A stretch of 64,000 bases of DNA from Pocillopora damicornis (GCF_003704095.1 NW_020846166.1:124001-188000), one strand, 5' to 3'. Positions 142 to 63,400 are shown, counted from the stretch's first letter. Notes: generated by a model not told the origin, from the letters alone. Numbers and translations: made by a program.

Positions 142-3100
142 TTGTGGTTATGTCTTTGGTGGGTCCATGTCCTTTGCTAGTAAAAGCTGCGATTTTTATG
201 TCATATTTAGCGTAGCTCTCTAGATCAATAAGTACGTCGTCGTTCGAAGACGCTGATAATTGCTTCTTGACATAGTCTCTTGGAAAAACTGGTGTTTTAT
301 CATTAATGCCAAGTCTAATGATGCTATACCATATAAAGTAGCCACGAAGAATACCGTGTAGGAAGGGCACGGGTGGACTTTGCCATGACACGTAGATTTT
401 TGTGGCACTCGCCTCATCCCTGGCGTAAACATTTTGTGGAGTCTCGCTTGGAACTGAAATAATTTTTACTNNNNNNNNNNNNNNNNNNNNNNNNNNNNNN
501 NNNNNNNNNNNNNNNNNNNNNNNNNNNNNNNNNNNNNNNNNNNNNNNNNNNNNNNNNNNNNNNNNNNNNNNNNNNNNNNNNNNNNNNNNNNNNNNNNNNN
601 NNNNNNNNNNNNNNNNNNNNNNNNNNNNNNNNNNNNNNNNNNNNNNNNNNNNNNNNNNNNNNNNNNNNNNNNNNNNNNNNNNNNNNNNNNNNNNNTAAGG
701 CTGATCTGAAGTAAACTAAGAACCAGTTTCTTGACCATAAGCCTACTGCGTCACAACTACGGTATTACAAAAGGAGAAACTTTGTATAGCCCTGGATTAA
801 AAAAATTTAAAATGGTAAGTTAATGACGATTGTAGCCAAATTAAAATATCTCACTGATACTCACTGTCTTCGTCTGTTGAAACTTTGATCGTTGGAGACT
901 GAGCACCATCTCCTTTTATGGTGAATGCAAGGACCATTATGCTGTAGTTAGTAAATTTCTTAAGATCTTTTAATACTATTTTTCTGACCCTGGGAGGAAC
1001 AGTGATCTTTGTAAACGGTGCTGAAGGCTTGTTCGTTTCTTTATATAGTACTCGGTAACCTCGTAATATGCCGTGAACAAATCCTGTTGGTACTGGGTTC
1101 CACGTGATATTTAGAGCTGTTGAACTGATGTTGTTCGCCCAGAGATTTTGAGGAGGACGACTGGGAACTAAGGAAAGAGGCAATTTCATTTCAAGTGAGT
1201 GTATTGACACAAAGAGCAAAGTAATAAATCAATAAGCCAATCAAAGCAGAGTAAGTGTTAAGTAGCATATAGGAATATGAAGTCAAACATTCAAACTGCA
1301 TGGAGCTCGAGAACATGAAAATGTCACTTAGCGTTGACCAAAGTGCAACCTTCTTTGGGTATTATGTCACATAATGAATTTTGTTTGCTTTATCTTTAGT
1401 GTTCCACAAGTAATGTATGATTTAAACGCCATTGGTTCTAGCAAGGGAATATCAACTGAGAGAACTTATTCCACATAAATACCTCTTTTCCGATGATATT
1501 TTTTAAAATCTAATTTTAGAGCGCATTCCTGTTCCTGATATTCTCTTGGTTCTTGTTAATACTTTGTTATCATGTAACATTGACCCATTTTATAGCCGGC
1601 TCTTTCTTTGCGTGTAAAATACCATTTAATCAGTTTGCATCATACAAGAGAATATAAAGTTCATATTCTCTTGCATCAGATTGTTTTTGAAGCAGCTGTT
1701 AAACCAGTTTACACTTTTGATGTATTTCAAAATAAAGTACGTGTGCTTTAATCTAAATAATAACACCTAGTATACGGGAACATCGACGTAAAACAACGGA
1801 AACGACCTTGCTGTAGAAATTGTGAACTTTTTCATACCATCTTCATCAGTAGAAACTATGAATGGCGGTGACTTTGTTCCGTCTCCAATCCTGGTATAGG
1901 CAGCCAATTGTATGGTGTAGTTAGTAAACTTTTTCAACATCGTTAGTTCCTTGGACAGTTTGTTGGCAGACACAATGGTGTAAGGAACACTTGTAGGTTG
2001 GTGTTGGGTTATACGGTAGAATACTCTGTAACCCAGTAATATACCGTGAACAAATCCGGTGGGAACCTCCAGCCACGTCACGTTCACACTTGTAGAGCTT
2101 GTGTTGAATGAGTGGACACTTTGAGGAGGAGAGCTGGGAACTGGCACAAACACAGTGGCGTGAGGGGGGTAGCAAAGAGACATTCCTGTCTCCCCGATGT
2201 AAACCCCCACCGTTTATTATCTTGGCTCTACACTCTACCAAGCTTCTTTATTTAACTTTCTCTAAATTGTTTCTTACACAACAGCCCTTTCAGGAAAAGG
2301 CCATAAAAATGTGTTATCCACATGAAGGCATCATTATTATGTTTTCATCGTTGGAATGAAGCGGTTTAATGGCTTACAGAGCACGTGTACTAACTTTACG
2401 ACAGCCTTGTACGAGGGAATTGTACGAGCAATTTTAGGTTAGGCGAGTAGAAAGCAGGCTTTGTCCACAACACACCCACGCCTAAACTATTGTTTAGGTT
2501 TTTCGAAAATTTTGCAAATTGGATGGAAGCAGAGGCTTAAGTTATATGCTTCTCAAACATTGTGTAATTGCTTGAAAGATGAACTTGAATCTTACCATCT
2601 TCATCTGTCATAACAGAAATGTTATTGGACACTTCTCCGTCGCCCTTTATTGTGAAAGCCAACACTTTCACTGAATATTCCGTGAACTTTTTCAAGCCTG
2701 TGATGTGAAGTTTACGCTCGGTTGGCTCTGTGGTGGAGTTAAGATAGTAGCTTTCCTCATCATCAGTCCTCCTGTAGAAGACTCGGTACCCCCGGAGAAT
2801 TCCATGAATAAATCCCTTTGGTACCTCACCCCAGGTCATCAGAAGGCTGGTAGAGCTGGTATTGTGCGCTGTCACTTTAGATGGGGGTAGACTGGGTACT
2901 GAAATATATAGAAGACACAAGAAGATTTGTTTTTCTTCGGTGTTACATAAACAGCTGTCCTGTGAGGATTTGATCTGACCAAATTTGGTTATGACCATTT
3001 ACAGTTTTTCATGTAATGAAATCAATACATTAATTGCAAATTATGTACGTATAATTAGTCATCATTATGTATGTCACTAATCAGATACTGTTAGCATTGG

Positions 3101-3189
3101 CTGAATGGAATAAACACAAGATTATATACAGTTCAGTCTGATTGATCTCTCCGAAATTTCATTGCTCAGGTATTCTACAAATGAATAAA

Positions 3190-13900: not shown

Positions 13901-16900
13901 TGTGGCCTCTGCTAAACTCCACTTATCCCATGTTGAACATTTCTGCAACCATCACCAAATGGTTGCAAATTCGTTTCGATGGATAAATGTTGAATGCGAT
14001 ATAAAACATAGGCAAATCCACGAAAAATTAAAACGTAAGATATAAACACGTCATTGAAAACTTTGAATCGTAAGCGCCACCAAAATCATAAAAAAGGAAA
14101 AATGCACACGAAAGGAAGTTCTTTGATCTGAAAAAATGAAAACTATTTTCTGTTTTCCAGTCCCTACTGCAAGGCCGAGTTAGTTGAAGGGCTTTCTGTC
14201 CGCCTACGAAGCCCTCTTAGAACTGGCTGGGCCTCTCAGAGACTCGATTATTTTTCTTTTCCTCGCCTGTGAGAATTGGTTGACATATTTCTTAATTTTG
14301 TTTTCATTGGTTTTCTAGTTTCACCTAGATGTGCTGTGGTGATATTGCGGGCTTTAGAGGGAAGCCCAAACCCTTTTGAAGTCACGCGTACGGTCCAAAT
14401 TGTGTACGTGGTACCAGGTTGTAGTTTTGATATTTTAACTTCTGATTGGTTATCATTCACTATGACAGAGCGTGTAATGTTATCAGCGGCTTTGTAAGTG
14501 ACCCTTAGTCCCCAGTTCTCTATCATCTGTTGTATTCTCTCAGATGACCATGACACATGAAGCACCGTTGACCCTCCTACGGTGACGTTTATTTTCCTGG
14601 GCGGCTTTCCTGGAACTGGAAGAGGAAATGATCGTCTTGTTATTTATTGATGCAATCACCTATTTAACGCTGTATAATTATCAAAAAACATGGAAATTTA
14701 TAGTAATTTTCCTCACCAATTGAAACTTGCTTTGTAATGGGCTAATGAGACTTTTCTTGATATTTAACTTACTTGTATCATTGATGACACTTATTGGCAT
14801 TGACCCTAAGCGTTCATTTTCGGAGAGGAAACTGTAAAAATAGTTCGTATGACGGATGTGGAACTGCTCTGAAAACGTTAGACGAATATCTGCGGAAACC
14901 AGGCCACTTGAATTCCTATTCAGGAAGAAAAAGAGAAAAAATTTTTCTTGAATTAACATATTCAACCTGGTTAAAATGATATCTCAACAAAATGAATGAG
15001 GATGTAGGTAGAATGATATAATGATGGCGCCCTTGATACTAATTTATAGTCGTTAAATTTTTCTATCTTAGCGAAAATTTGTAGTTTTGTTTTCTTTTAT
15101 TTTTGACAATAACCCATTGGGTAATGCATTTATTAAGTTAATTGTTTTCGTTTAAAAAATATATATAAATAAAAAATTAAATACTCTTAAAGAACAAACG
15201 GAAACAATTATACAATCATGCTTTTCCTTGGATTGAAAAAGAATAAATATTCGCGAAACCTCTCAGGGAGAGAAATATACCTTTTTTTTTTTACTAAGGT
15301 TCATATTTTGTAATCATTTGATATCTTTTACCTTAGTTGAAGAACTAATACTTGCAGAATGGAAGAAGCATTGCCCAAAGTCAGCAAGACCTGCAACCCA
15401 AGAAAGAGATTTACGAAAAACATATTCATTCAATGAGTTAGTCACGATTATGAATCACATATTTTACCATTGAAAAAATCTTTAAAATTGTAGATAAACA
15501 AGAGGCGAGATAAGAAATGTCAGCTTAGCGCTAAATTAAAGGTATCTAATTTTTTATCTTACTGTTAAAAAGACGTCTTACACATACACCGCATAGGCTT
15601 GTATCAACACACCTGAACTGACGAAATTTTGATTTAAATCAATAGTAAATAGCTCAGTTTTTATTCTTTGGACAGTTCTAGACGTTTTGCAGCTTATTTG
15701 CACAGCTTACTGTTTAAAAACATGTGCATGAAATAACTTACGTTTTGCTTCACGGTAGAAGATATGTCCATGAACATATCACTGCTTCTGTTTTCATAAC
15801 AAACTCTCCAAGACTCATTTTTCAGTAGCAGCTTTACTTGAAAATATAGATTATTGCTTCCTAGAATTTAATTTCGTTGTTAGCGTTAGAAGTAATCTAT
15901 TTCTTTGCTATAACATAGTTTAACGAAGTATCAGGCTTATTTTTGACAGCACGACCTACATGTATAAATATTTCAGGAGGAGGTAACCCTTTTAGTTTGG
16001 AAAACGTTGCAAAGCAATCCATTCTTTGTTTACATACTTTAGAGTTGGAAGGAATCTTTACTCCTCTCTTTGGGAAAAGTAAGTCTACGTTCACGACACA
16101 GACTTTTAAATTTCATCACAAGTTTTTGTTTTATTTGATTGATGCAATTTTTTGTGTAATGAAACAAAAGATTCGTTGAATTTCATAAACACATGATAAC
16201 TGTGGTAGTTAACTTGTGAAAGCAAAGGTGAAGTAAATAGCTGTACAGGAGGACCTTCAATGTACTAGCAGCCCTGAAATCTTAGACATTAAGCAGGAAA
16301 AATGAACTTTTTCTGTGATGAAACAAAAGATTGTTGAATTTCACAAACACGTAGTAACTGTGGACGTAGGCTTGTGAAAGTGAAATGGAAGGAAATAGCC
16401 GTATAGGTAGATATATAACCTTACTAGCACTCCTAGAAGCTCCCAGTATATTACGGAGGAAAAATTATCTTACCGTTCTTTAACTTAGGTGTATCCTGAA
16501 AAGTCGCTACTGTGCTGGTAAGAGACGCGATTTGAGAAGCTGTGGATGGTCGAATGAAGCTTGTAGACAAAGAAGTCGAGGAGAGAACCGCTATACAGGA
16601 CATTGTCTCATTTGGGCCTAGGAAATATGCAAATTATATACAGTAGACATTTGGGATCGGGCGAGTACAACACTAATAGGCCAAGAGAATTCCTTTTCAA
16701 TTGCCAAAATCATTTTCGACTTTTTCTCCTTTCACCCTCCTTCTTCTTTCGTAATCAGATTTTGCGTTTTTTTAGAAAGAGATATGATGGGTAAGCTCCT
16801 TTTTTTTTTTTTTTTTATCAAAAACTAGGGGCCAACTGCTAGATATACCAAATCACACGCGAAATTGAAACTTTGGGTTAAGGTTTGAAGTGTCGCGAGA

Positions 16901-17794
16901 AATAGATTTTTTCCTTTTAGCGACGCCGGTCAGAAGTGTACAATAAGTAAAATGAACTTATTAACCAACGTTAAGTAAGCACCGTCCTTTGGAATCGGAG
17001 AAAAGTTCTTTGGCACTCACTTTGTAACAATTCTGTGGGATGACTGCATAACCTTTAATTTTTTTTTTGGCAATATGTTTTTTGTAGCTGTACTACCTAA
17101 CAAAAAACAAAAACTACCTTTCAGTTGATAAAAGGATCTTGAGTTATCGATCAGCAGTTCACGATCTTTACAGGAGAGCTTCATCAAAAGACAATCACGT
17201 GTAGCTGTTATGTGTTCAAAGGAACTACAGTTGTAGATATTTTGTCGAGCCACTTGAAGACATAGCTGCGCACACTCCCCGACAGACAACTGCTGAAAAG
17301 ATATTTTGTGGTGACCAGAGAGACGAAGGTCAGGATAAGGAAGAAACTTCGCCAGAGAGTCATTGAGGTTGGATGGTGATGTAGCTTCGTCTGAATAACA
17401 CAGAAGGTCTTCTAAATATTTTAATCAATATTATTATGTAATTCTGTGTTTAATGAATGAATAAATGATACAATTTTGTTGCCATAAATAACAGTCAATT
17501 GTTTCAACGCGCCAAGTCATTGACGATGATACAAGCACGACTTGGTTGCTAGGAAACCAAGTTACCAAGGAATGCAATTTAAAAGAAATTGACAAAAATG
17601 TGATATAAAAAAATAGCATTAATCCATCTCATTATGACTTTGCATTAACGCGAATAGTGAAAACAGTGGTAAAACTACTTAAATGACCCAAGCAAAGCAA
17701 AATTAAATACAGTATATGCAGTAAATAGATTACCTTGAACAAAAAGAACGCAAAACGAATAGAATAAAATGCTCATGCAAAACAAAACTGTCAT
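142..17794 (-). CDS. Large secreted or cell-surface modular protein, 3'-partial: signal peptide - PAN/apple - S/T linker - (SEA-FN3)x4 - FN3x8
   Basis: Hand-spliced exons, phases consistent and no stops: 17734-17794 (MTVLFCMSILFYSFCVLFVQ), 17118-17390 (PAN), 16474-16617 (S/T), SEA1 15742-15860/15332-15390/14773-14915, FN3 14325-14615, SEA2 13509-13627/12926-12984/12307-12449, FN3 11239-11541, SEA3 10797-10906/10629-10687/10023-10165, FN3 9583-9876, SEA4 9212-9321/8608-8669/8159-8295, FN3 7673-7966, 6707-7000, 5780-6076, 4913-5203, 3876-4175, 2596-2898, 1838-2140, 865-1167, 142-453. The last exon ends at a GT donor, so the gene continues left of the window. Confidence 0.9.
471..695. other. Assembly gap (N run) inside an FN3-array intron
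   Basis: Run of N. Confidence 1.
3184..3370 (-). mobile_element. Short Penelope-like (PLE-type) insertion with a 13-bp target site duplication and a minimal hammerhead-like core
   Basis: TATTCTACAAATG is repeated at 3171-3183 and 3371-3383. There is an internal partial inverted repeat. The minus strand reads GCT-CTGACGA-AGGGCTAACGCTC-GAAAC-TTC-AGC. Related copies lie at 3653-3810 and 58022-58195. The PLE assignment is inferred from this structure. Confidence 0.7.
3618..3640. repeat. (GATT)n microsatellite
   Basis: gattgattgattgattgattgat. Confidence 0.85.
3653..3810 (-). repeat. Diverged copy of the 3184-3370 element
   Basis: Shares aaggggt.aagttt.taaagaaactgtggtgct.cgtc...aaattggc...aagctgac.tt..gagcgtta...tcagagc. 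Confidence 0.75.
5425..5575. mobile_element. Palindromic MITE (about 150 bp, long imperfect terminal inverted repeats)
   Basis: Left end CCAGGTCCCGGTTGGTCGAAGGGTGGATAATGCTATCC matches the reverse complement of the right end, CCTGGCCCAGTTGTTCGAAGGGAGGATAACGCTATCC. Confidence 0.75.
8159..9321 (-). CDS. SEA domain 4 (three exons), retains the G-S-V motif
   Basis: VPINLTVRFTSMKWNVNLSNPESDNFNNLSKIIRES / VFVLYGQESSYLRDVRCHRF / TNGSVLADMTIVY; exons 110/62/137 nt. Confidence 0.8.
10023..10906 (-). CDS. SEA domain 3 (three exons)
   Basis: VPINASVRLINKEWTDELLNSTSIFFMNLTKQLQTQ / VAGLYPNEIHLRDIVIHRF / RNYSGEVVVDIVITF; exons 110/59/143 nt. Confidence 0.8.
11640..11765 (-). mobile_element. Degenerate tRNA-derived SINE-like repeat
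   Basis: The minus strand has B-box-like GGGTTTCAATCC followed by the palindromic AGCCTGAATTTTTCAGGCT. The family is recognised from memory of anthozoan repeats. Confidence 0.5.
12307..13627 (-). CDS. SEA domain 2 (three exons)
   Basis: IHFRVLLINVSWETQLGNKSSETFRNLSSFIENS / VRVLHQNDSFYNNVSSVSF / RNYRGETMVSIEALY; exons 119/59/143 nt. Confidence 0.75.
14773..15860 (-). CDS. SEA domain 1 (three exons)
   Basis: LYFQVKLLLKNESWRVCYENRSSDMFMDISSTVKQN / VLLTLGNASSILQVLVLQL / RNSSGLVSADIRLTF; exons 119/59/143 nt, phases 1-0-2-1. Confidence 0.7.
16153..16466. repeat. Diverged tandem duplication, two units of about 160 bp, intronic
   Basis: Both units read atgaaacaaaagatt.gttgaatttca.aaacac...taactgtgg...cttgtgaaag...aaatagc.gta.agg...tactagca...ggaaaaat. 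Confidence 0.8.
17118..17390 (-). CDS. PAN/apple domain exon of the modular protein
   Basis: Phase 1-1 exon of 273 nt: FLPYPDLRLSGHHKISFQQLSVGECAQLCLQVARQNIYNCSSFEHITATRDCLLMKLSC, with the PAN pattern eC-x3-C...CxSF...CxL. Confidence 0.8.
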
Positions 17795-21689: not shown

Positions 21690-22165
21690 TTGGGTTTTTC
21701 CCACCCATAAATAAGAATATCGCATTGTTGATAAGTTCTGGTGAGCGAGCAGTTTGACAACGGTTTCGTAGGGAGCTTCTTTACTCTTCCTCTATTCTAC
21801 ATTCATGGAGAATTTTTCTTGAACAGGGATCGATGACTATCTATCGCCNNNNNNNNNNNNNNNNNNNNNNNNNNNNNNNNNNNNNNNNNNNNNNNNNNNN
21901 NNNNNGATTTGCAGTCAATTTCTGTAATCCCCCATTTTTGTTCTGTTTGCGACGACTAACCTGTTCCCCCCGAAAACCATGTGATCGGGGGGATCACCTA
22001 CGACCTGAACCCCCTGCCAAATTCTCCGACCCTCCCAAGGGATAGATAATGACCATTCGTTGATGGGGCTGTGCCCACCCATAAATAAGAAGATTGGATC
22101 GTTACCAAGTTCCGCTGAACGAACAGTTTCACAGTGTTTTTGTAGAGAGCTTCTTTGCCCTCCCG
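21690..22165. repeat. Diverged direct repeat (about 100 bp twice) straddling an N gap
   Basis: cccacccataaataagaa...aagttc...cagttt.aca...gtag.gagcttcttt.c.ct.cc occurs near 21700 and near 22074. Confidence 0.7.
21849..21905. other. Assembly gap (N run)
   Basis: Run of N. Confidence 1.
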
Positions 22166-29000: not shown

Positions 29001-31529
29001 GAGCGCTCTCAGTATAGTCGGTCGGAGCGCAGGAAAACTTTTTATATCCACGTCCAACAAACTCCTTTTTTATTTTCTCTAATATTATGTTCTGTTGCAA
29101 CACCCAGAGGAAAAAGTTTACTTGGTACAATATCTATGTTATTTGTTTTGTTAGGATAACGATTGTGGCTCAATGTGACATGGATCTGCGCCTGTATCCA
29201 ATGGATACCCAACACTGTGCATTGAGACTCGAGAGCTGTAAGTATGGAAATGGACCAGGTGCAGAGTAGCGGAAAATTTGCTCCTTAACTTTCGCTACTG
29301 CGAAGTGTTTAATTTTTTCCATTTGACAGTCAGACTATTGTTACAGTGCTGAGTTTCTTCTGATGATTTATGTGAATTTTTTTTTTTTACTATTTTGTCC
29401 CTTATGGGGCTTATAGCAAACTTCGGGTCGAAATATCAAAGGTAATCACGTAAGATAATTAAGCAAAATGAGTCAGATAGTGAGGAATCGAAAAAATTAT
29501 AAAAGATAACATTAGACTGCCTTAATCTTAAGGAAACGCGCACACCAGATAGCAAGTGGTTTTCTTTTGTTTCTAAATTGATGAAAGTGTATTCACGAGG
29601 CTCAAGCGAAACATATGCAAAAATGCAGTACGAATCTTCCTTTCACCGATTGCAGTTCTCGCCGATTGTGGTTCTAAAAAAATTACCCGGCCAATCCTGT
29701 TTCTCTGTTTCTCCTCAGATGCCCACACAGTGGCAGACGTAGACTATAAGTGGAAAATTGGTAAAAATAAAGGGATCGAGATTGTCTCCTCAGAGTTGGC
29801 TCAGTTTGATCTTCTTCGCGTTGTGACTGAGAATAAAGCAAGCACTAATAGCAAAGGTGAGATAACACATGTATTCTTGGCGCATATCCCCTTATTACCT
29901 TAACTTTTCCCAGTGAGGACCGAGGGGAAGGGGAGGGGGAGGGAGGGTCTAGCCTTCTCAGCTTATCATTGCATCCTCTGCGTGAAATACCCAGCCAGGA
30001 AGTCTGCTTCTACCATATGCGAGACAGTGGCTTCTCTTTACCCACCCAAAAATCTCTTTTAGTGCTAAGCTCTAATCTATGACAAACCATTTTCCACTGT
30101 TTAACTTATAAAGAAACTAAACTTGTGATATTTGCTCTCTATCCTTAAAAATCTTGAATCGGTATATTGGAATTTTATCAATGGCCGCATGGTTACTTAA
30201 CGCATATTTGACTCATTCGAATAGGTCTCTATAGTGCCTCACGTATTCCACGAGTAACAAAGTTACTGATCCTCTGTTATTCCTTTTCCACTTCAAACAA
30301 CTCTGTTATTTCTAACTATTTTAAGTATTTTAAGTATAAAACAGAAGTACACTTAAATGGCGTCCATGGTTTTCTTCGCTCAGGTTCATTTGCCAAATTA
30401 GTAGCGGTGTTCTCCTTCAGACGTCGTCTTGATTATTACATTTCATCCGTGTACGTACCGGAAGTCATCTTGGTAGTGTTGTCATGGTGCACGTTTTTCA
30501 TCACACCCTCAGCTGTTCCGGCAAGAATATCTCTCAGTATCACAACTATTCTGACCACCATCCTACTATCCAGCACCTTAAATTCAAATATTCCAAAGGT
30601 AAAACGCACGGAAATTGCTTACTCGGGGCTGTTATTTAACCGTGTTCTGACCCATGCTCATCGAGACGTTGATTTTTACCAACAATGTCAAGTATGCTTA
30701 TCGCTAGCACGAGAAAAGAATGATTCATCTCAAAAAGATATGCATAAAACATTTCTATGACAATCGTACATCTTTAAATAAACCTCGTTCAATAACTGGC
30801 CTTTAGCATCTAGAAGTTAAGCCCTAGAAAATGTTAGATCATACGACCAAGGGTGTGTGTCGGACGAAAGTCGTTCCCAGGCTGTAGTAATTGTTAAACT
30901 GTTACTTTTAAATTTTAGGTCAGTTACATGAAAGCCGTAGACTACTTTATGCTAACGTCCTTCGGCTTTATCTTCACGGCTCTGGTGGAATATATTATTG
31001 TGCTGAACACCCCTGAGGCATTTTCAGATAGTTTCAACTGCTTCGAGAAAAAGCAGAAGAATGAACCAGTTCAAGTTCAGGTAACTTCTGTTCAATGCTG
31101 TCCTTGAAATAACACCAACGAGTTAACTCATTGGCATAAATTCGGGGTCAGACAGTTTTATTGTGATCTTGCGTTACAAACTTCGTCTTACGCAAGCTAG
31201 ATCCCCGGATTCTTCTTTTGCTGCCGTTTTGAAAAAAGCTTTTATCTAGCACGTGTAAGGAGGAAGGATTGGCACATTTTGTCCTTGTGCATAGTTTATG
31301 ACCTGTTTAGTAAAAATTGTGCTTATTGCAGGACGGACCAGAGGAGTTGATTCTTAAAATCAATGCCTCCCCGAAGATGCTGGACCTGAGCAAGCCCAGG
31401 AAACCTCCTGAAACTAAACCGAGCCCTCCCAAGGATCACTGGGTCGACAAATGTTCCCGTATCCTTTTCCCCGCGTTTTACGCTCTCTTCCTCATGGCAT
31501 ATGTCATACATTACAAGAGAAAAGAGTGA
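26093..31529 (+). CDS. Cys-loop ligand-gated anion channel subunit A (GABA-A/glycine receptor-like, putative glutamate-gated chloride channel), about 419 aa
   Basis: Nine GT-AG exons: 26093-26169, 26913-27013, 27248-27315, 28165-28382, 29155-29237, 29719-29856, 30384-30598, 30919-31080, 31332-31529. Signal peptide, YDRKLRP, WTPDTYF, Cys-loop CDMDLRLYPMDTQHC, M2 PARISLSITTILT, PKVSYMKAVD, M4 VDKCSRILFP. Confidence 0.93.
28520..28825 (+). mobile_element. Degenerate SINE-like interspersed repeat in an intron of subunit A
   Basis: catgaagcggctggga...gtgctagtccat...caccctgggtg...aagtatctttctcaagaacacaac resembles a common anthozoan SINE body (recognition only). Confidence 0.4.
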
Positions 31530-33703: not shown

Positions 33704-36700
33704 CTAGTCCAACACATGTCCCTTGGAGTCGCTCTCCTCCCTGAGCGCACTGTAGTATATGGTGTACGCGACGAGAAATGTGACGTACAAAGTTGGGAAG
33801 AGGAATCTTGACAATCGGTCGATCCAGTGCGCCTTAGTTTTTGTTGCTACTGGCGGCGTTAAGGGAAGTTGCTGTTTTGGTTGTGGCTTCAGCTTGATAT
33901 TTCCCTTGTTATTCCTGATTCTACAAACTCCTTCATCCATCACTTGCACAATCAGATCAACACTTCCCTTGCTGTGTGCCTACAAAGAAGAGAAATCTTT
34001 CTTTACACTTTGATCACCGGGATTTTTGGTCATTGGGATTATCACAACCAGGAAATGTGGTGTCAGCTTATATAAAGTGATACATAAAGCGCTATGATTG
34101 GATTATATGAGGAAAAAAAACATTTGACGGCCAGAAATACATCGACATGACCAAGCTTTGAAAGCCTTCAAGGCTAGCTCAAGAGTTTCCTTCTACTATT
34201 CTTTTAATCCCTTCATAAGGAAATTGTTTCCAGCCACCTGATTGATAAACAGAGCTCATTAGAGACCAAAAAAGCCCACAAATTACTTCAACAAAAAAGT
34301 CCACGTTGGAAAGTCTGGGAGTAAAATTACAAAATATTTGAAACTTCCGACAACCTGATCTTACGTAACGAATGATAATAGGAATCCTCTGTACATCTGC
34401 CAAACTGAGGGCAATTACAAATTATTCAGCCGTGCCGTAACCGTTCAATAGAGAGATAAGAGAAAATAGTCGTTTTTAAATGATTAAAGTTGAGGATAAT
34501 CTTTTCTCTCTACCACTTACTTCACATTCCATTGCAATTTCCTTTTTGTCTCCTCTTTTGTCCTTCTTGAACCAGGAAGGTGGAGAAAACACTGGACTGG
34601 TGTTGAGGACGATGATGAATTCGATTAAGGCGGCGAAGATGAAGCCAAAAGAGGTCAGCAAGAAATAATCAACGGCTTTCATGTAGCTGACCTTAGGCAT
34701 GTCTCTGTTAACGTTGCCTTTGAGTAGAATGGAGGTTAAAATAGTGGTGATACTCAAAGCCACTCTGGCAGGAACAGCTGAAGGGGAGATGAAGAAGCAA
34801 CACCACGACAAAACAACCAGGACTACTGCTGGGACAAATATGGCAGAAACAAAGCTCTCTGTGCGCCGTCGAAATGAAAACACCGCCTTGAGACTTGCGA
34901 AGGAACCTAAGAATGTTTGTAGGAAAGAGAGTCGTTTGATACACACTCGGGCTTCGCTACAATTCTCTAAAATTGGTGCATTTCTTCGTTTGGTCTTTAG
35001 TCTGTTAGCTAGCATTATTTGGCACAGTGAAGAGAGCCAAACTTAATTACTTAAGCCTCGCCCTCCTATTCAAAGTACTTTTTTTTATCTCCTCATGTCG
35101 TTCTCCTCAGGGAACTCGTTGGTGAAATAAACGTTCCAAAGAATAGTTGTTAAACTTGAATTTCTACTTTTCAATTTCTCAAGCGCAAATCAACGTTTTA
35201 TCTCAACTTTTGCGAATTGGATCACTCCTCGGTCCAGTTCTGAGGATGATCCTATATTTATGTCTTGAAAAGCCCCCTTATCTGTATCATTTTTCGTCCA
35301 GTTATGTAAAAGATGTTGTAAGAAAGAATTTGTGAGAGATAAAGTACGGTTAGTCTCACCTTGTTGCCTCGAGTATTATTTATACTATCTAAAAATTACA
35401 TTAGCCTCAAAATAAAACGAAAAAGAAAACTCTGTACAACGAAGAAAAAGTACAGGAAGAAAGTTTCTAGAGAAACCTCATTATTACACTGGTTTGATAC
35501 CAAGTGAAGCTCGTTGCTTTTGTTCGTACAGATATGAGAATTACGGCCATTCCACTAAGTTATACCGTCCACTAAATTTTGCTCATGATTTTATCCGCTT
35601 TATTTTTAAAACTCACCTTTACTGTTCGTCTGCGACTTGGTGTAAGTTTTAACATCAGTCAGATCAAACTGAGCCATTTCCTTCGACACTATCTCTACAC
35701 TTTGTTTATCTCCTCCCTTCCAGCGGTAATCAACATCTGCTGTCGTATACGCATCTAGAATGAGACGAAATAAAAAAAAAGTAAAAAGAATCACAGTGGA
35801 CTTTGGCACAGTCCAGTTGATCTGTACGGATTCGATTCGTATCAGAAGAACTGTAGGACAAATTTCCACATATAACAATTGTCATAAAGAGAGAAATGGC
35901 TCGGGAAGCCGCACTAGCATGCAGGAAGTTGCATGTGTTCCAAAATTACTTCGGATTATGTGGTTTGTTAACAAAAAATCTTGTCTTTGGTTGCTGTGCC
36001 GTTGAATACTTACAGCTTTCTATGATAAGAGGACAATACTGAGTGTCCATTGGGTAAAGGTGCAAATCCATATCACATTGAGCTGTTAGTGTTATCCTGG
36101 GAGAACAATAACAGAAAAGGTCTCAAATAACAATGTTGATCCTTCTGCTCTAAGGAGCGACCCAAAAGTACTTTCTCCTTACAAAATCAGTACAAGTTTA
36201 TGTAAAAGAGAACTGAGGGGAAAAGAAAGGTATTGACACGGGGACATCATTCGATTAAACTCCAAACTTAAAGGCTAAAATAAAAGTTAATGAAGAGGTT
36301 TGGCAGATAGAGCGGGAGTTGAAAGAGTGTATTTAGATCTTGCGATTAAAATTGAGGCGGACATAGAATGAACTTTTTCAAGACTGAAATGAAATAGTTT
36401 TGAAACTTTCTCTAAGAAAAAGATGCAGAATCGTCAGATCATCGTTGCTGCGAGTTGGAATTATTTTTCTTTTGTTTTTATTAGTGCAAATTTACCTTGT
36501 GCTGTAATAAATCTCCCCATCGGGCGATATTTTCACTCTCATATTCTCTCGGGTGACGAAATGATATTTAGCATCTTTTACATTCCAGAAGTACGTATCT
36601 GGAGTCCAGAAAAGCTTTGTGGGATCCGCTGCCATATTGAACGGTTTACTATAATTATTCTTAAACCTTGGATCATGCCACCATTGTCGCATAAAAATGT

Positions 36701-60422: not shown

Positions 60423-63400
60423 TTAGAATGGTGCTTGATCTACAAAGTTACGCCAAAACAAAACAAGGAAGGCAATGTAACTGGCTGGGAAGATAATTCG
60501 GGAAATTATGTCGACCCAGTGGGAGCTGATTTTTTTCCTCTTTTTAGGCGGGTCTTTATTGATAGGTTTGACCTGAATCTTGCCTTGATGCATTGCACCC
60601 GTGTTATCGAATAACATCACTGTAGCTCCTTGGCCTCCGTTAGAGACCACTACTCGCTGAGTAAGTGTGTGACCACACCCTCCCACGTGGCTATTTACTG
60701 CGGGTGTACTAGTTTCAGGGGAGTGGCTGATCTCAGCGTCGATGAGTTCTGTATCTGGCTCAGTATTGGAGCTATTCTGTGAAGAAATTGAAAGATTACT
60801 TTTTTAAGAAACAAAATTAAGAAAAATACTGTACAATCACATTTAAAAGACTCCCCCTATGGGTTTCAAGCTAGTGATAAACTTGCAAACTAATCAAAGT
60901 TCGATGTGCTCGTGTTTGAACGAGGGAAATTAACTAGCTAACTAACATACCAATTAAGCATCTAAACAAACACATAATCAGCCAAGTGACCTAATGAATG
61001 ACTAACTCAGAACTCAACAAATGCTTAGTTAGTTTACTTTATAATTAACTGATTGACTGACATACTGACGAGCTTACTAATTTACTGAATGGCTAACTAA
61101 TTAATTATCTAACCTATTGACTTACAAACTGAGAGATTGACTGATAGGTTAACTTACCTTTGAGGTTCGTGAGGCACGAAAATACAAAGGAAATATCACA
61201 ACATAAGATATATACAGATATATTTTTACCAAAAGGTGATGCTCGACTGAGTCTGACTAGTGGAGAATGGAGATGCAGGTTATTATGCATTTGTTTCCAA
61301 TCTTACTATGAGAAGAGATCGATTAGAATAAGGCTGCAGCGCCAGTGGCTAAGAAACTACAGACTAATGCATACCTCAAAGATACCAGTCACAACAAGAA
61401 TCTAATAAAGATTTTTACCTCTTTCTCGCGTACGACATCCATAAGTTTTAGTGGCTGTTTTCCTCTCTATTTGTAAAAAAATATAAGGTATTGTGGTAAA
61501 CAAAAACATAACTTTTATGTAGTTCGCCGGTAAAAAAAGAACACTTCCAGAAATGAATAAAGTACATGATTAAGAGCAAGAAAACTAGTTGAGTTGATAT
61601 AAAAATTTGGTGATATTACCTTTTTGGGTCGTAATCTCAGGCACACCAAGAGACATTGTAGCCATTTAGGGTCAGGATCAGTGTTCAATACAATCACAAA
61701 CTCCAGAAATGAAAGGAAAATGAACCCAAAGCTGACTAGTAAGAAATAGTCTTGAGCCTTACTGTAACTGACTGGTGGCATGGCTTCGTTCACTGAGCCG
61801 CAAAGCACGATGGCTGTAAGAATTATTGTGATACCCAGTGACGCACGTGCGGGAACAGCATCACGGGAAATCCAGAAACAGCACCATGAGAGCATGACAA
61901 GAGTCACTCCTGGAGAGAAAACCGAAGAAACGAAATATTCCAGACGGCGTTTGAACGAGAATATAACGCTCAGACCGGCGAACGAACCTGCATGTCAAAA
62001 TGGAAAAAATACCACACGATGTAGTAAGAATTACGCATTCAAAATCAATGATTTCAAATGCAAACGAGGGATCACCGTGATTTTGTTTTCATAGCTGTTC
62101 AGAGGGGGATCTACGAGTCTCTTGTGATCCGCCATTGTTACGTCACACCACCTCGTCAATTCGAGGAAATTTATCCGAAAGAAAGGAGAGGAACTTAACT
62201 AAAAATTCATCAGCTTGATACCTTTGCTGTTCTTTGTGTCTCTTAGTTTCGTGTCTATGCCAGCCAACTCAAACTGAGCCATCTCTTGGGAAACAATTTC
62301 GATCCCTTTTCCTTTGTTTGCGACAGTTTTTCTCCATTTATAATCCACGTCATCAGTAGTATGAGCATCTGAAATGATAAGTAAATCAGTCAAACGATGA
62401 GGCATACTCATTAATTTCTCCAGCATTGCAAATTGTACTATTTCTAGAGTGTGATTGGTTAAGCAAAGAGAAACTGGAGAAAGATAATTACAATTTTAAA
62501 AAACGCAAGAGGGAGTCCTCGGTAAATATTTGGACTTCAAACCTCAAATCTCTCGATAGGATTCACCCTAAAAACATTGCGGTGAAGAGGGCTTGTTAGA
62601 AGCCTGGCTGTAAAATTATGCTGAGTTCTCAAACGATGTTACTTCTCCGAAATCGAAGTGAATATTCTCTAAAGAAGTAAATTTCAGAAAGAATAGGGCA
62701 TTCTTCTGCTTTTTATTCATTTCTCAGTTTGACTGAAAAAAAATTGAAGTAATCTGTAAATAATCTTTGTAATGTTTGCAAAACAAGATCAGACCACTCC
62801 AACTTTGATATCGAGTTACAGACGTACTCACAGCTTTCAATGATCAGAGGACAGTGTTGGGTATCCATTGGGTAAAGTCGGAAGTCCATGTCACATTGCG
62901 CCGTCAAGGTTATTCTGCAAAGAAAATGGAAACAGATATCACCAAAAGGTATTGAGAATATTTTGTTTGTCATTTTAGTTGCTTTGGCTAATAGAACATT
63001 GCATCTGAGGGCTCAAAATAATTTCTAAGAACATATCACTTTTGGCCTCCGTGAGGTACGTACTGGAGCGGAAGAAATATCCCCTTACATAATTATTCCG
63101 TATGTCGTATTGTAGCTATTATCACAATTTACCCCACTTTACTCTTCAAAAATTCAATAATTATTCAAAATATTTCCTGAAATTAGAAGTACTAGACTAA
63201 ATTACTCCTTCGCTTCCACCAGTTGGAATTTATTCGCCAAAATTTAAGCCTGCCCATCATTATTCTCGTGAATATCATATAGCTTCTAAGGTTCAAGTTT
63301 ACGGACGAAAAACATTTGCATCACCTTGCGCTGAAGTATATTTTCCCTGTGGAGTAAATCATGACTCGCATGTTCTCGCGAGTGACATAATGGTACTTTA

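What the first reader, a model, noticed from the sequence alone, without database searches (positions are those of the whole stretch)
142..17794. Giant ectodomain with the architecture PAN - S/T - (SEA-FN3)x4 - FN3x8
Seen: 27 in-phase exons give more than 1770 aa in which SEA domains strictly alternate with FN3 domains, capped by one PAN/apple domain. The small SEA exons are largely missed by the ORF track. Known: SEA domains occur in membrane mucins, agrin, TMPRSS proteases and adhesion GPCRs; FN3 arrays occur in RPTPs, Sidekick and Dscam; PAN domains bind proteins or glycans. I know of no characterised protein with this combination. Inference: a long, heavily N-glycosylated (many NxS/T sequons) tether or antenna with a binding tip, possibly for mechanosensing, adhesion or mucus/skeleton contact.
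Basis: partly seen in the sequence, partly recalled or inferred. Interest (0 to 1): 0.8.

Follow-up and report, generated by a model that had tools for sequence, protein, structure and literature searches.

The report
Giant adhesion ectodomain on potassium channel
The giant PAN–SEA–FN3 ectodomain is real, but it is not a protein of its own: RNA joins it directly to a glutamate-receptor-shaped channel with an intact potassium-channel filter, a family found mainly in cnidarians that I could not find described in any paper.

Summary
On the minus strand, 27 in-phase exons (17794 down to 142) give an open 1,775-aa frame. It reads: signal peptide, PAN/apple, S/T linker, four (SEA–FN3) units, then eight more FN3 domains. 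It carries 65 N-glycosylation sequons, against about 22 expected.

The assembly gap at 471–695 lies inside an intron. RNA contigs from four runs (three studies) splice straight across it.

The main correction concerns the 3' end. The same RNA contigs join the last FN3 exon to exons just outside the window. These encode S1–M1–pore loop (TMTTVGYGD)–M3–S2–M4. By predicted fold, a Nematostella paralogue of this module matches full-length AMPA/NMDA receptors. Its clamshell best matches the bacterial GluR0 ligand-binding core (Z 19.9).

So the "ectodomain" takes the place of the amino-terminal domain of a GluR0-like potassium channel subunit of about 2,280 aa. The Nematostella counterpart (LOC5515158) has the same architecture. 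This genome holds at least 25 paralogous loci. Relatives carry other adhesion or lectin heads.

All database names are automatic or "uncharacterized", and I found no paper on the family. The scan has already noted paralogues of this family elsewhere in this genome. Gating by contact or ligand, and potassium selectivity, are inferred, not shown.

The parts
17734..17794 (-). Exon 1: start codon and hydrophobic signal peptide (20 aa), phase-1 donor
   Evidence: Predicted: ATG at 17794, donor GTAATC. No Pfam hit. No RNA evidence.
17118..17390 (-). Exon 2: PAN/apple domain
   Evidence: Pfam PAN_1, E 8.4e-8, 32.4 bits against cut-off 21.4. Splice sites predicted.
16474..16617 (-). Exon 3: Ser/Thr-rich linker (48 aa)
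   Evidence: Composition read directly. Phase-1 acceptor and GTAAGA donor.
15742..15860 (-). SEA unit 1, exon a (strand 1 + helix 1)
   Evidence: Pfam SEA profile positions 2-41, 13.6 bits, below cut-off. Splice sites.
15332..15390 (-). SEA unit 1, exon b (59 nt micro-exon)
   Evidence: Only in-phase AG..GT exon with the pattern shared by all four units. The weakest of the four.
14773..14915 (-). SEA unit 1, exon c (strand 3, helix 2, strand 4); G-L at the cleavage position
   Evidence: The unit matches P0008 251-351 in the in-script profile search.
14325..14615 (-). FN3-1
   Evidence: Pfam fn3, E 2.2e-11. Phase 1-1 exon.
13509..13627 (-). SEA unit 2, exon a
   Evidence: Pfam SEA 4-40, 18.9 bits..
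12926..12984 (-). SEA unit 2, exon b (59 nt)
12307..12449 (-). SEA unit 2, exon c; G-E at the cleavage position
11239..11541 (-). FN3-2
   Evidence: Pfam fn3, E 1.3e-9..
10797..10906 (-). SEA unit 3, exon a
   Evidence: Pfam SEA 3-40, 17.7 bits..
10629..10687 (-). SEA unit 3, exon b (59 nt)
10023..10165 (-). SEA unit 3, exon c; G-E-V-V-V at the cleavage position
9583..9876 (-). FN3-3, ending in a GC donor
   Evidence: Pfam fn3, E 2.8e-12. A related coral contig has a canonical GT donor at the same base, and similarity falls away after it.
9212..9321 (-). SEA unit 4, exon a
   Evidence: Pfam SEA 3-40, 25.7 bits against cut-off 26.4..
8608..8669 (-). SEA unit 4, exon b (62 nt)
   Evidence: Resembles the matching stretch of P0008.
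8159..8295 (-). SEA unit 4, exon c; the only unit with G-S at the autoproteolysis position
7673..7966 (-). FN3-4
   Evidence: Pfam fn3, E 4.2e-10..
6707..7000 (-). FN3-5
   Evidence: Pfam fn3, E 1.7e-12..
5780..6076 (-). FN3-6
   Evidence: Pfam fn3, E 1.1e-12..
4913..5203 (-). FN3-7
   Evidence: Pfam fn3, E 4e-15..
3876..4175 (-). FN3-8
   Evidence: Pfam fn3, E 4.3e-12..
2596..2898 (-). FN3-9 (the donor end at 2596 is RNA-verified)
   Evidence: Pfam fn3. RNA joint to 2140 in 4 runs. The acceptor end at 2898 coincides with where contig pieces stop on the laid stretch but was not seen as a joint.
1838..2140 (-). FN3-10 (both ends RNA-verified)
   Evidence: Pfam fn3. RNA joints in 4 runs.
865..1167 (-). 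FN3-11 (both ends RNA-verified)
   Evidence: Pfam fn3, E 5.2e-14. RNA joints.
471..695 (.). Assembly gap, inside the intron between FN3-11 and FN3-12
   Evidence: RNA contigs of 4 runs join 865 to 453 across it. The frame stays open.
142..453 (-). FN3-12, divergent. Its donor is spliced to the S1 exon of the channel 730 bases further on, outside the window
   Evidence: Pfam fn3, E 9.8e-7. RNA joint to L002 9411 in all 4 runs, with 255 letters on the shorter side.

Best explanation
The stretch is the first 27 of about 36 exons of one coral gene. The gene spans about 25.7 kb on the minus strand (C2801:116094-141794) and encodes a membrane protein of about 2,280 aa.

Shown:
- The outside part is signal peptide, PAN/apple tip, S/T linker, four SEA-FN3 units and eight further FN3 domains. 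It is very rich in N-glycosylation sequons.
- It runs without a break into a channel module: a two-lobed ligand-binding clamshell (S1 and S2) interrupted by M1, a re-entrant pore loop with the potassium-channel signature T-T-V-G-Y-G-D, and an M3 helix with a weakened SYTANLAAF-like motif. A fourth membrane helix and a helical cytoplasmic tail follow.
- This is the layout of an ionotropic glutamate receptor with the pore of bacterial GluR0. The PAN-SEA-FN3 array sits where animal glutamate receptors carry their amino-terminal domain.

Inferred:
- Four subunits form a potassium-selective pore.
- Opening lets K+ out and so hyperpolarises the cell.
- Gating goes through the clamshell.
- The long glycosylated stalk holds a binding tip about 50 nm or more from the membrane. 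There it either captures or presents a ligand, or couples contact or pull on a partner to the clamshell.

The gene belongs to a cnidarian-expanded family in which many different adhesion or lectin heads are mounted on the same FN3 stalk and channel.
For: One transcript:
- RNA contigs of runs X1, X2, X5 and X12 (3 studies) carry GT..AG joints FN3-9 | FN3-10 | FN3-11 | FN3-12 | S1 | M1 | pore exon.
- The spliced frame is open from FN3 into the filter.

Channel exons and pore:
- The rest of the channel was found exon by exon. The module is 506 aa, ends in a stop, and is 46% identical to the C-terminus of P0008.
- Ion_trans_2 matches two exons split at TVG|YGD.
- PDB sequence hits are potassium-channel pores only.

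Fold, tested on Nematostella paralogue P0146 (channel part pLDDT above 90):
- Foldseek's top hits are full-length GluA2 and NMDA receptors over 450-540 columns, E about 1e-11.
- VIA-align gives the clamshell best to the GluR0 core 2pyy (Z 19.9, rmsd 2.7, 202 of 212) and to 1ii5 (Z 19.2).
- A second paralogue again matches GluR0 and the AvGluR1 cores.

Same architecture elsewhere:
- P0008, Nematostella LOC5515158, 2,426 aa: 12 fn3, SEA at 42.5 bits, Ion_trans_2.
- Other members carry LamG/pentraxin, F5/8C, MAM, TLDc, fibrinogen-C, TSP1, PA14, or CUB+Ig heads.
- At least 25 further S1-like exons lie in this genome.

The filter residues are invariant across 32 family members.
Against: - No function was measured. 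Potassium selectivity, tetramer formation and any gating stimulus are inferred from homology.
- The clamshell has no Pfam or PDB match by sequence. Whether it keeps amino-acid-binding residues was not tested.
- Fold evidence comes from Nematostella paralogues, not from this gene's own spliced protein.
- RNA evidence is from assembled contigs of holobiont metatranscriptomes. Such contigs cannot show transcript ends or rare isoforms. They cover only the 3' four FN3 exons plus three channel exons.
- 23 upstream exons are predictions.
- The possible autoproteolytic G-S of SEA unit 4 is A-S in the Nematostella counterpart, so a cleavage-based mechanism is not conserved.
Confidence: 0.6

Rival explanations
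1. The channel is gated only by a small soluble ligand in the clamshell, as in GluR0 and ordinary glutamate receptors. The giant glycosylated array serves placement, spacing, assembly or protection (a glycocalyx-like stalk or anchoring to matrix) and does not gate.
For: - The clamshell's best structural matches are amino-acid-binding proteins and GluR0 cores with bound glutamate or glutamine.
- Bare members of about 500 aa, without any large ectodomain, exist in cnidarians, hemichordates and annelids, so the module can presumably work alone.
- According to a review (PMC12332018), amino-terminal domains proved less important for receptor assembly than anticipated in a synthetic glutamate-gated K+ channel.
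Against: - The head domains are swapped extensively between paralogues while the stalk and channel stay. This looks like diversification of what is recognised.
- The link from the last FN3 to S1 is only about eight residues, which would pass movement on.
Confidence: 0.3
2. It is a stand-alone adhesion or receptor protein, as the database names of relatives suggest (receptor tyrosine phosphatase, PTPRQ, sidekick). The channel exons would then belong to a separate downstream gene.
For: - The FN3 domains are closest in structure to LAR and PTP-delta FN3 domains.
- Automatic names such as 'Protein-tyrosine-phosphatase', 'PTPRQ' and 'sidekick-1' are attached to relatives.
Against: - The RNA joint FN3-12 to S1 is present in all four runs, with an open frame.
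- There is no membrane helix, stop codon or start/signal sequence between them.
- No phosphatase or Ig domain appears in any Pfam scan of P0008 or its paralogues.
- Nematostella gene models on a chromosome-scale assembly have the same fusion.
Confidence: 0.03
3. The pore is vestigial. The protein acts as an adhesion or signalling receptor through its cytoplasmic tail, and the channel-like part serves only as a membrane anchor.
For: No current has been recorded for any member. The clamshell is too divergent for sequence-based recognition.
Against: - T-T-V-G-Y-G-D and the flanking pore-helix residues are invariant across 32 members from several phyla.
- The pore exons are the best-conserved part against Nematostella, at 62-68%.
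- This is the pattern expected of a working filter.
Confidence: 0.07

Closest known systems
GluR0 (Synechocystis / Nostoc glutamate-gated potassium channel)
   Same: An amino-acid-binding-protein clamshell split by a pore with the TXVGYG potassium filter. It is the best structural match of the clamshell (2pyy Z 19.9, 1ii5 Z 19.2). Background in PMC12332018.
   Different: GluR0 has two membrane helices and no N-terminal extension. This protein adds M4, a helical cytoplasmic tail, a signal peptide and a 1,775-aa PAN-SEA-FN3 array. Its ligand is unknown, and there is no detectable sequence match in the clamshell.
AvGluR1 (rotifer Adineta vaga)
   Same: An animal receptor with eukaryotic glutamate-receptor topology that still carries a potassium-channel-type filter signature (PMC12332018). 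Its ligand-binding core is among the structural matches (4io2, Z 14.4).
   Different: No giant adhesion-type ectodomain is described for it. Membership of the same clade was not tested here.
AMPA / NMDA-type ionotropic glutamate receptors
   Same: S1-M1-P-M3-S2-M4 layout, with a further extracellular layer in front of S1. Foldseek's top matches span 450-540 columns.
   Different: Their front layer is a LIVBP-like clamshell (ANF_receptor), and their filter has the Q/R/N site and passes cations unselectively. Here the front layer is PAN, SEA and FN3, and the filter is TTVGYGD.
Polycystin-1 / PKD-REJ proteins and adhesion GPCRs
   Same: The design idea: a very long, glycosylated, modular adhesion ectodomain with a potentially self-cleaving module next to the membrane part, thought to turn contact or force into a signal (my own knowledge, not tested here).
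   Different: Unrelated membrane domains (TRP-like channel, 7TM), and a GPS/GAIN module instead of SEA.
Receptor tyrosine phosphatases of the LAR / PTPRQ type, and Sidekick
   Same: Long FN3 arrays. The closest FN3 structures are LAR and PTP-delta. Automatic annotation gives these names to relatives.
   Different: No phosphatase domain, no Ig domains, and no single-pass membrane anchor.
Membrane mucins (MUC1, MUC16) and other SEA proteins
   Same: S/T-rich region, dense glycosylation, SEA domains. One unit carries G-S at the cleavage turn.
   Different: The SEA domains here alternate with FN3. Three of four lack the nucleophile. They sit far from the membrane, not next to it.

Membership tests
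SEA domain (PF01390) | Match to the Pfam profile at or above the gathering score | tested here: inconclusive
   Searched exon by exon only. The first exon of every unit matches profile positions 2-41, at 13.6-25.7 bits against a cut-off of 26.4. The Nematostella counterpart scores 42.5 bits. An in-script profile of the four window units hits the Pfam-SEA stretches of five paralogues. The joined units were not sent to Pfam.
SEA domain (PF01390) | Strand-helix-strand-strand-helix-strand fold | tested here: inconclusive
   The model of paralogue P0054 has exactly this order of elements at residues 51-149, with pLDDT 67-84. The structure search list was filled by FN3 and clamshell matches, so no SEA structure could be compared. 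The window's own units were not folded.
SEA domain (PF01390) | G-S-[VI]-V-V autoproteolysis motif at the strand 2-3 turn (present in cleaving SEA domains only) | tested here: not met
   Unit 4 has G-S-V-L-A. Units 1-3 have G-L, G-E and G-E. Nematostella unit 4 has A-S.
Fibronectin type III (PF00041) | Pfam profile above the gathering score | tested here: met
   12 exons, 29-56 bits against a cut-off of 25.
PAN/apple (PF00024) | Pfam profile above the gathering score | tested here: met
   32.4 bits against 21.4, E 8.4e-8.
Ionotropic glutamate receptor superfamily (GluR0 / AvGluR1-like branch) | Two-lobed binding-protein clamshell whose two halves flank the pore (S1-M1-P-M3-S2) | tested here: met
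   Exon order in this gene. Folds of paralogues P0146 and P0054. This gene's own protein was not folded.
Ionotropic glutamate receptor superfamily (GluR0 / AvGluR1-like branch) | Potassium-channel filter TXVGYG, as in GluR0 | tested here: met
   T-T-V-G-Y-G-D read directly, split by an intron after TVG. Ion_trans_2 matches.
Ionotropic glutamate receptor superfamily (GluR0 / AvGluR1-like branch) | M4 helix after S2 (eukaryotic receptors) | tested here: met
   A hydrophobic stretch of about 22 residues in the exon after S2. A long helix at the matching place in the P0146 model.
Ionotropic glutamate receptor superfamily (GluR0 / AvGluR1-like branch) | LIVBP-like amino-terminal domain (animal AMPA/NMDA classes) | tested here: not met
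   No ANF_receptor match in any member. PAN, SEA and FN3 stand in its place.
Ionotropic glutamate receptor superfamily (GluR0 / AvGluR1-like branch) | Amino-acid-binding residues in the cleft, ligand gating, and K+ selectivity | not tested
   No residue-level structural alignment was available. Function needs electrophysiology.
Receptor tyrosine phosphatase / Sidekick (names given by databases to relatives) | Cytoplasmic phosphatase domain, or Ig domains plus a single-pass anchor | tested here: not met
   The downstream exons encode the channel. No such domain appears in P0008 or its paralogues.

The most novel reading that the evidence does not exclude
The family is a repertoire of ionotropic contact receptors. 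Each paralogue mounts a different adhesion or lectin head (here PAN) on a stiff glycosylated FN3/SEA stalk. Binding of, or pull from, a surface-bound partner (prey, symbiont, neighbouring tissue, mucus or skeletal matrix) is passed through the short FN3-S1 link to the clamshell and opens a potassium pore. Touch or recognition would then be turned directly into hyperpolarisation. That would be an adhesion- or force-gated member of the glutamate-receptor superfamily, and a possible living intermediate between bacterial GluR0 and animal receptors.
Probability: 0.3. Interest if true: 0.9.

Novelty: new variant of a known kind. Interest (0 to 1): 0.75.

Why it matters
- Glutamate-receptor-type channels are held to have arisen by joining a binding-protein clamshell to a potassium-channel pore. 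GluR0 in bacteria and a single rotifer receptor are the usual witnesses.
- Here an animal keeps the potassium filter, already has M4, and has put a 1,775-aa adhesion array where the amino-terminal domain sits. This is one of at least 25 loci in a single coral genome, with counterparts in sea anemones and hydrozoans. Bare versions occur in hemichordates and annelids.
- That makes two questions testable: how the front layer of these receptors was acquired, and what it can do.
- It points to a possible class of inhibitory, contact- or ligand-gated receptors in cnidarians that current annotation hides under names such as sidekick, PTPRQ, cubilin or Kv channel.

Tried and rejected
- Pfam on the S1, S2, M1, M4 and tail exons alone gave nothing meaningful. 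The third SEA exons alone also gave nothing.
- The ESM Atlas search of P0146 gave no usable hit.
- Pfam accession PF28033, listed in precomputed annotations of relatives, is not in the local library, so its meaning stays unknown.
- PDB sequence searches, with a single protein and with a 32-member profile, find only potassium-channel pores and FN3, never a glutamate-receptor clamshell. Only fold comparison shows it.
- The wide structure search with the P0054 model could not test the SEA part, because FN3 and clamshell matches filled the list.
- The word search with the FN3-3 exon returned only unspliced genomic ORFs, so it confirmed no junction. It did lead to the GC-donor comparison.
- A first automatic exon-chaining script found no path because its windows were wrong. 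It was redone by hand.
- Nine literature searches found no paper on the family. One of them was badly framed and uninformative. The library lacks most subscription journals, so absence is not proof.
- Rejected: an exon hidden in the gap (RNA skips it), and a strong-looking GT at 17172 (it lies inside a PAN cysteine codon).

Full report
**Where and what**

The window is G000:C2801:124001-188000 of a 234.35-Mb assembly in 4,393 contigs. The runs that hold the stretch are coral or marine metatranscriptomes. From memory, the assembly size fits the published Pocillopora damicornis draft, but I did not verify that.

All coding pieces of the finding lie on the minus strand.

**Domains, exon by exon**

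Every search used a reference to one stop-free genomic piece. No spliced sequence was handed to any search, family or fold tool. Joined sequence existed only inside scripts, for frame checks and local comparisons.

- Pfam finds PAN_1 at 17020-17424 (E 8.4e-8, above cut-off).
- Pfam finds fn3 above cut-off in twelve single exons.
- The first exon of each putative SEA unit matches the same N-terminal third of the SEA profile, at 13.6 to 25.7 bits against a cut-off of 26.4. That is consistent across units but below threshold alone.
- The third exons carry, at the expected place, a G-x-V-V-V-like turn followed by a helix and a strand.

**Gene model**

FN3 exons are phase 1-1 and 291-312 nt long.

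Each SEA unit has three exons:
- exon a: 110-119 nt, phase 1 to 0;
- exon b: 59-62 nt, phase 0 to 2;
- exon c: 137-143 nt, phase 2 to 1.

All have good acceptor tracts.

FN3-3 ends in a GC donor. A related coral contig has GT at the same base, and similarity drops after it.

N-x-S/T sequons number 65, against 21.9 +/- 4.1 in shuffles.

FN3-5 to FN3-11 are 42-61% identical to each other, which points to tandem duplication. The four SEA-linked FN3 domains and FN3-12 are more distant.

**Are the three-exon units SEA domains?**

- A profile built in-script from the four window units matches four full-length units in the Nematostella protein P0008.
- It also matches exactly the stretches that Pfam calls SEA in P0034, P0023, P0153, P0046 and P0155 (Pfam).
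- P0008 itself scores 42.5 bits on Pfam SEA.
- In the AlphaFold model of paralogue P0054, the matching stretch (residues 51-149) has the order strand, helix, strand, strand, helix, strand, at pLDDT of about 67-84.

I could not compare that part with solved SEA structures, because FN3 and clamshell matches filled the list. So SEA identity is well supported by homology, while the fold test on this gene's own units remains open.

Only unit 4 has G-S at the cleavage turn, and the Nematostella unit 4 has A-S.

**The gap**

Logan contigs of four RNA runs from three studies were laid on C2801:121851-127850 (L005). All four show a joint from window 865 to 453, with GT..AG ends on the minus strand. That intron of 411 bases contains the gap at 471-695. 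The frame is open across the joint. So the gap hides no exon in these transcripts, and the two sides are continuous and in frame.

**The gene does not end at the window's edge**

Just beyond the window start lie exons that read as a binding-protein lobe, a membrane helix, and a pore loop ending in T-M-T-T-V-G.

The same RNA contigs join FN3-12 (donor at window 142) to the S1 exon (L002 9411-9036). S1 is joined to M1 (8481-8379), and M1 to the pore exon (from 8022), in all four runs. The spliced frame runs open from FN3-9 into the filter.

Only about eight residues lie between the last FN3 and S1. There is no stop, no membrane helix and no new start.

The remaining channel exons were placed by similarity to P0008 and by splice phase:
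- Y-G-D + M3 (7116-6960);
- a short S2 exon (6048-5982);
- S2 (5287-5010);
- M4 (4653-4476);
- two tail exons, with a stop at L002 2094-2096.

This gives a 506-aa module, 46% identical to the C-terminus of P0008. The M3 helix carries S-S-I-T-A-S-L-M-S-M, a weakened form of the SYTANLAAF motif (read directly from the sequence; the motif itself is from my own knowledge). The whole protein is about 2,280 aa.

**What the channel module is**

By sequence, only the pore is recognisable. Ion_trans_2 matches the two exons split at TVG|YGD, and PDB sequence hits are potassium-channel pores.

By fold, the picture is clear:
- The model of Nematostella paralogue P0146 has pLDDT above 90 over the module.
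- Foldseek's top matches are full-length GluA2 and NMDA receptors over 450-540 columns.
- VIA-align puts the clamshell (residues 256-603, spanning the pore insertion) closest to the GluR0 cores 2pyy (Z 19.9, rmsd 2.7, 202 of 212) and 1ii5 (Z 19.2), together with glutamine- and arginine-binding proteins.
- A second paralogue gives GluR0, AvGluR1 and GluN1/GluN2A cores.

So the module is a GluR0-like clamshell and potassium pore, with the extra M4 of eukaryotic receptors.

**The family**

A full scan of 1.84 billion representatives with the S1 exon found 153 proteins. The long ones all have the match near their C-terminus, behind FN3 arrays.

Their heads differ:
- LamG/pentraxin, F5/8C, MAM, TLDc and fibrinogen-C in proteins of 3,000-4,000 aa;
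- TSP1 repeats;
- PA14;
- CUB plus Ig;
- SEA directly in front of FN3 in several.

P0008 is Nematostella LOC5515158. It has the same order as this gene, including four SEA-FN3 units.

Named members come from Nematostella, Stylophora, Montipora, Oculina, Actinia, Hydra and Hydractinia. Bare forms of about 500 aa also occur in Octocorallia, Scyphozoa, hemichordates (Saccoglossus, Glandiceps) and annelids (Dimorphilus, Owenia).

This genome has at least 25 further S1-like exons on other contigs.

Names are 'uncharacterized', 'predicted protein', or automatic misnomers: Protein-tyrosine-phosphatase, PTPRQ, sidekick-1, Cubilin, Kv subfamily members.

Two earlier notes of this scan describe paralogues elsewhere in this genome in the same terms. 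My evidence was gathered independently of them.

**Literature**

Nine searches found no paper on such proteins, on the accession numbers, or on GluR0-like channels in cnidarians. A 2025 review still names bacterial GluR0 and rotifer AvGluR1 as the potassium-filter relatives of glutamate receptors (PMC12332018). The library lacks most subscription journals, so this is absence of evidence only.

**How it most likely works**

Shown: one gene, the domain order, the filter sequence, the fold of close relatives, transcription, and conservation across Cnidaria.

Inferred:
- the subunits form a tetramer;
- the pore is inverted, as in GluR0 and glutamate receptors;
- it is K+-selective, so opening hyperpolarises the cell;
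- gating goes through the clamshell.

I think the PAN-tipped, heavily glycosylated stalk most likely takes part in sensing. It could capture a ligand, or couple contact to the clamshell through the very short FN3-S1 link. Two things favour this: paralogues keep the stalk and channel while swapping heads, and the array occupies the place of a regulatory domain.

The main rival is that a small ligand gates the channel and the array only positions it. The bare family members make that quite possible.

A stand-alone adhesion protein is contradicted by the RNA. A dead pore is unlikely given the invariant filter.

**Verdict**

It is a new variant of a known kind of channel, in a family that looks undescribed.

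Noticed in passing
window 3050-3450 (L005 5201-5600), intron between FN3-8 and FN3-9: RNA contig depth jumps to 10^4-10^5 here, with dozens of contigs, many loose ends and odd joints. This looks like a dispersed, widely transcribed repeat. Similar ORF fragments (…STTVSLETYP…) recur at L002 7504-7707 and L004 3213-3365.
   Followed up: no
window 30407-30760 (+), 34476-35015 (-), 61515-61907 (-): ORFs with the M1-M2 pattern of Cys-loop (GABA/glycine-receptor-like) ligand-gated channels. This suggests several such genes next to the giant gene. Read by eye only.
   Followed up: no
window 9583 (donor of FN3-3): A GC-AG intron. The window has GAAG|GCAAGG where a related coral contig has GAAG|GTGAGG.
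   Followed up: yes
window 8159-8295 versus 10023-10165, 12307-12449 and 14773-14915: Only the fourth SEA unit keeps Gly-Ser at the self-cleavage turn. The others have G-E, G-E and G-L. The Nematostella counterpart has A-S in unit 4, so cleavage is probably not a conserved feature.
   Followed up: partly
L003 8222-9286 (-) and L003 4539-5456 (-), downstream of the gene: A 355-aa single-exon ORF that looks by eye like a beta-1,3-galactosyltransferase, and a 306-aa ORF with a flavin-monooxygenase-like GxGxxG start. Not searched.
   Followed up: no
L002 4226-4410 and window 21849-21905: Two further assembly gaps. The first lies between the M4 exon and the tail exons of this gene. The Nematostella alignment needs no exon there, but this is not shown by RNA.
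   Followed up: partly
database records of relatives (P0011, P0036, P0046, P0171, P0203, P0211, P0271): Family members are automatically named sidekick-1, PTPRQ, Protein-tyrosine-phosphatase, Cubilin or voltage-gated K+ channel subfamily members. None of these fits their domain content.
   Followed up: partly
precomputed Pfam lists of P0008 and relatives: An accession, PF28033, recurs in this family but is absent from the local Pfam copy. It may be a new model that covers part of these proteins.
   Followed up: partly
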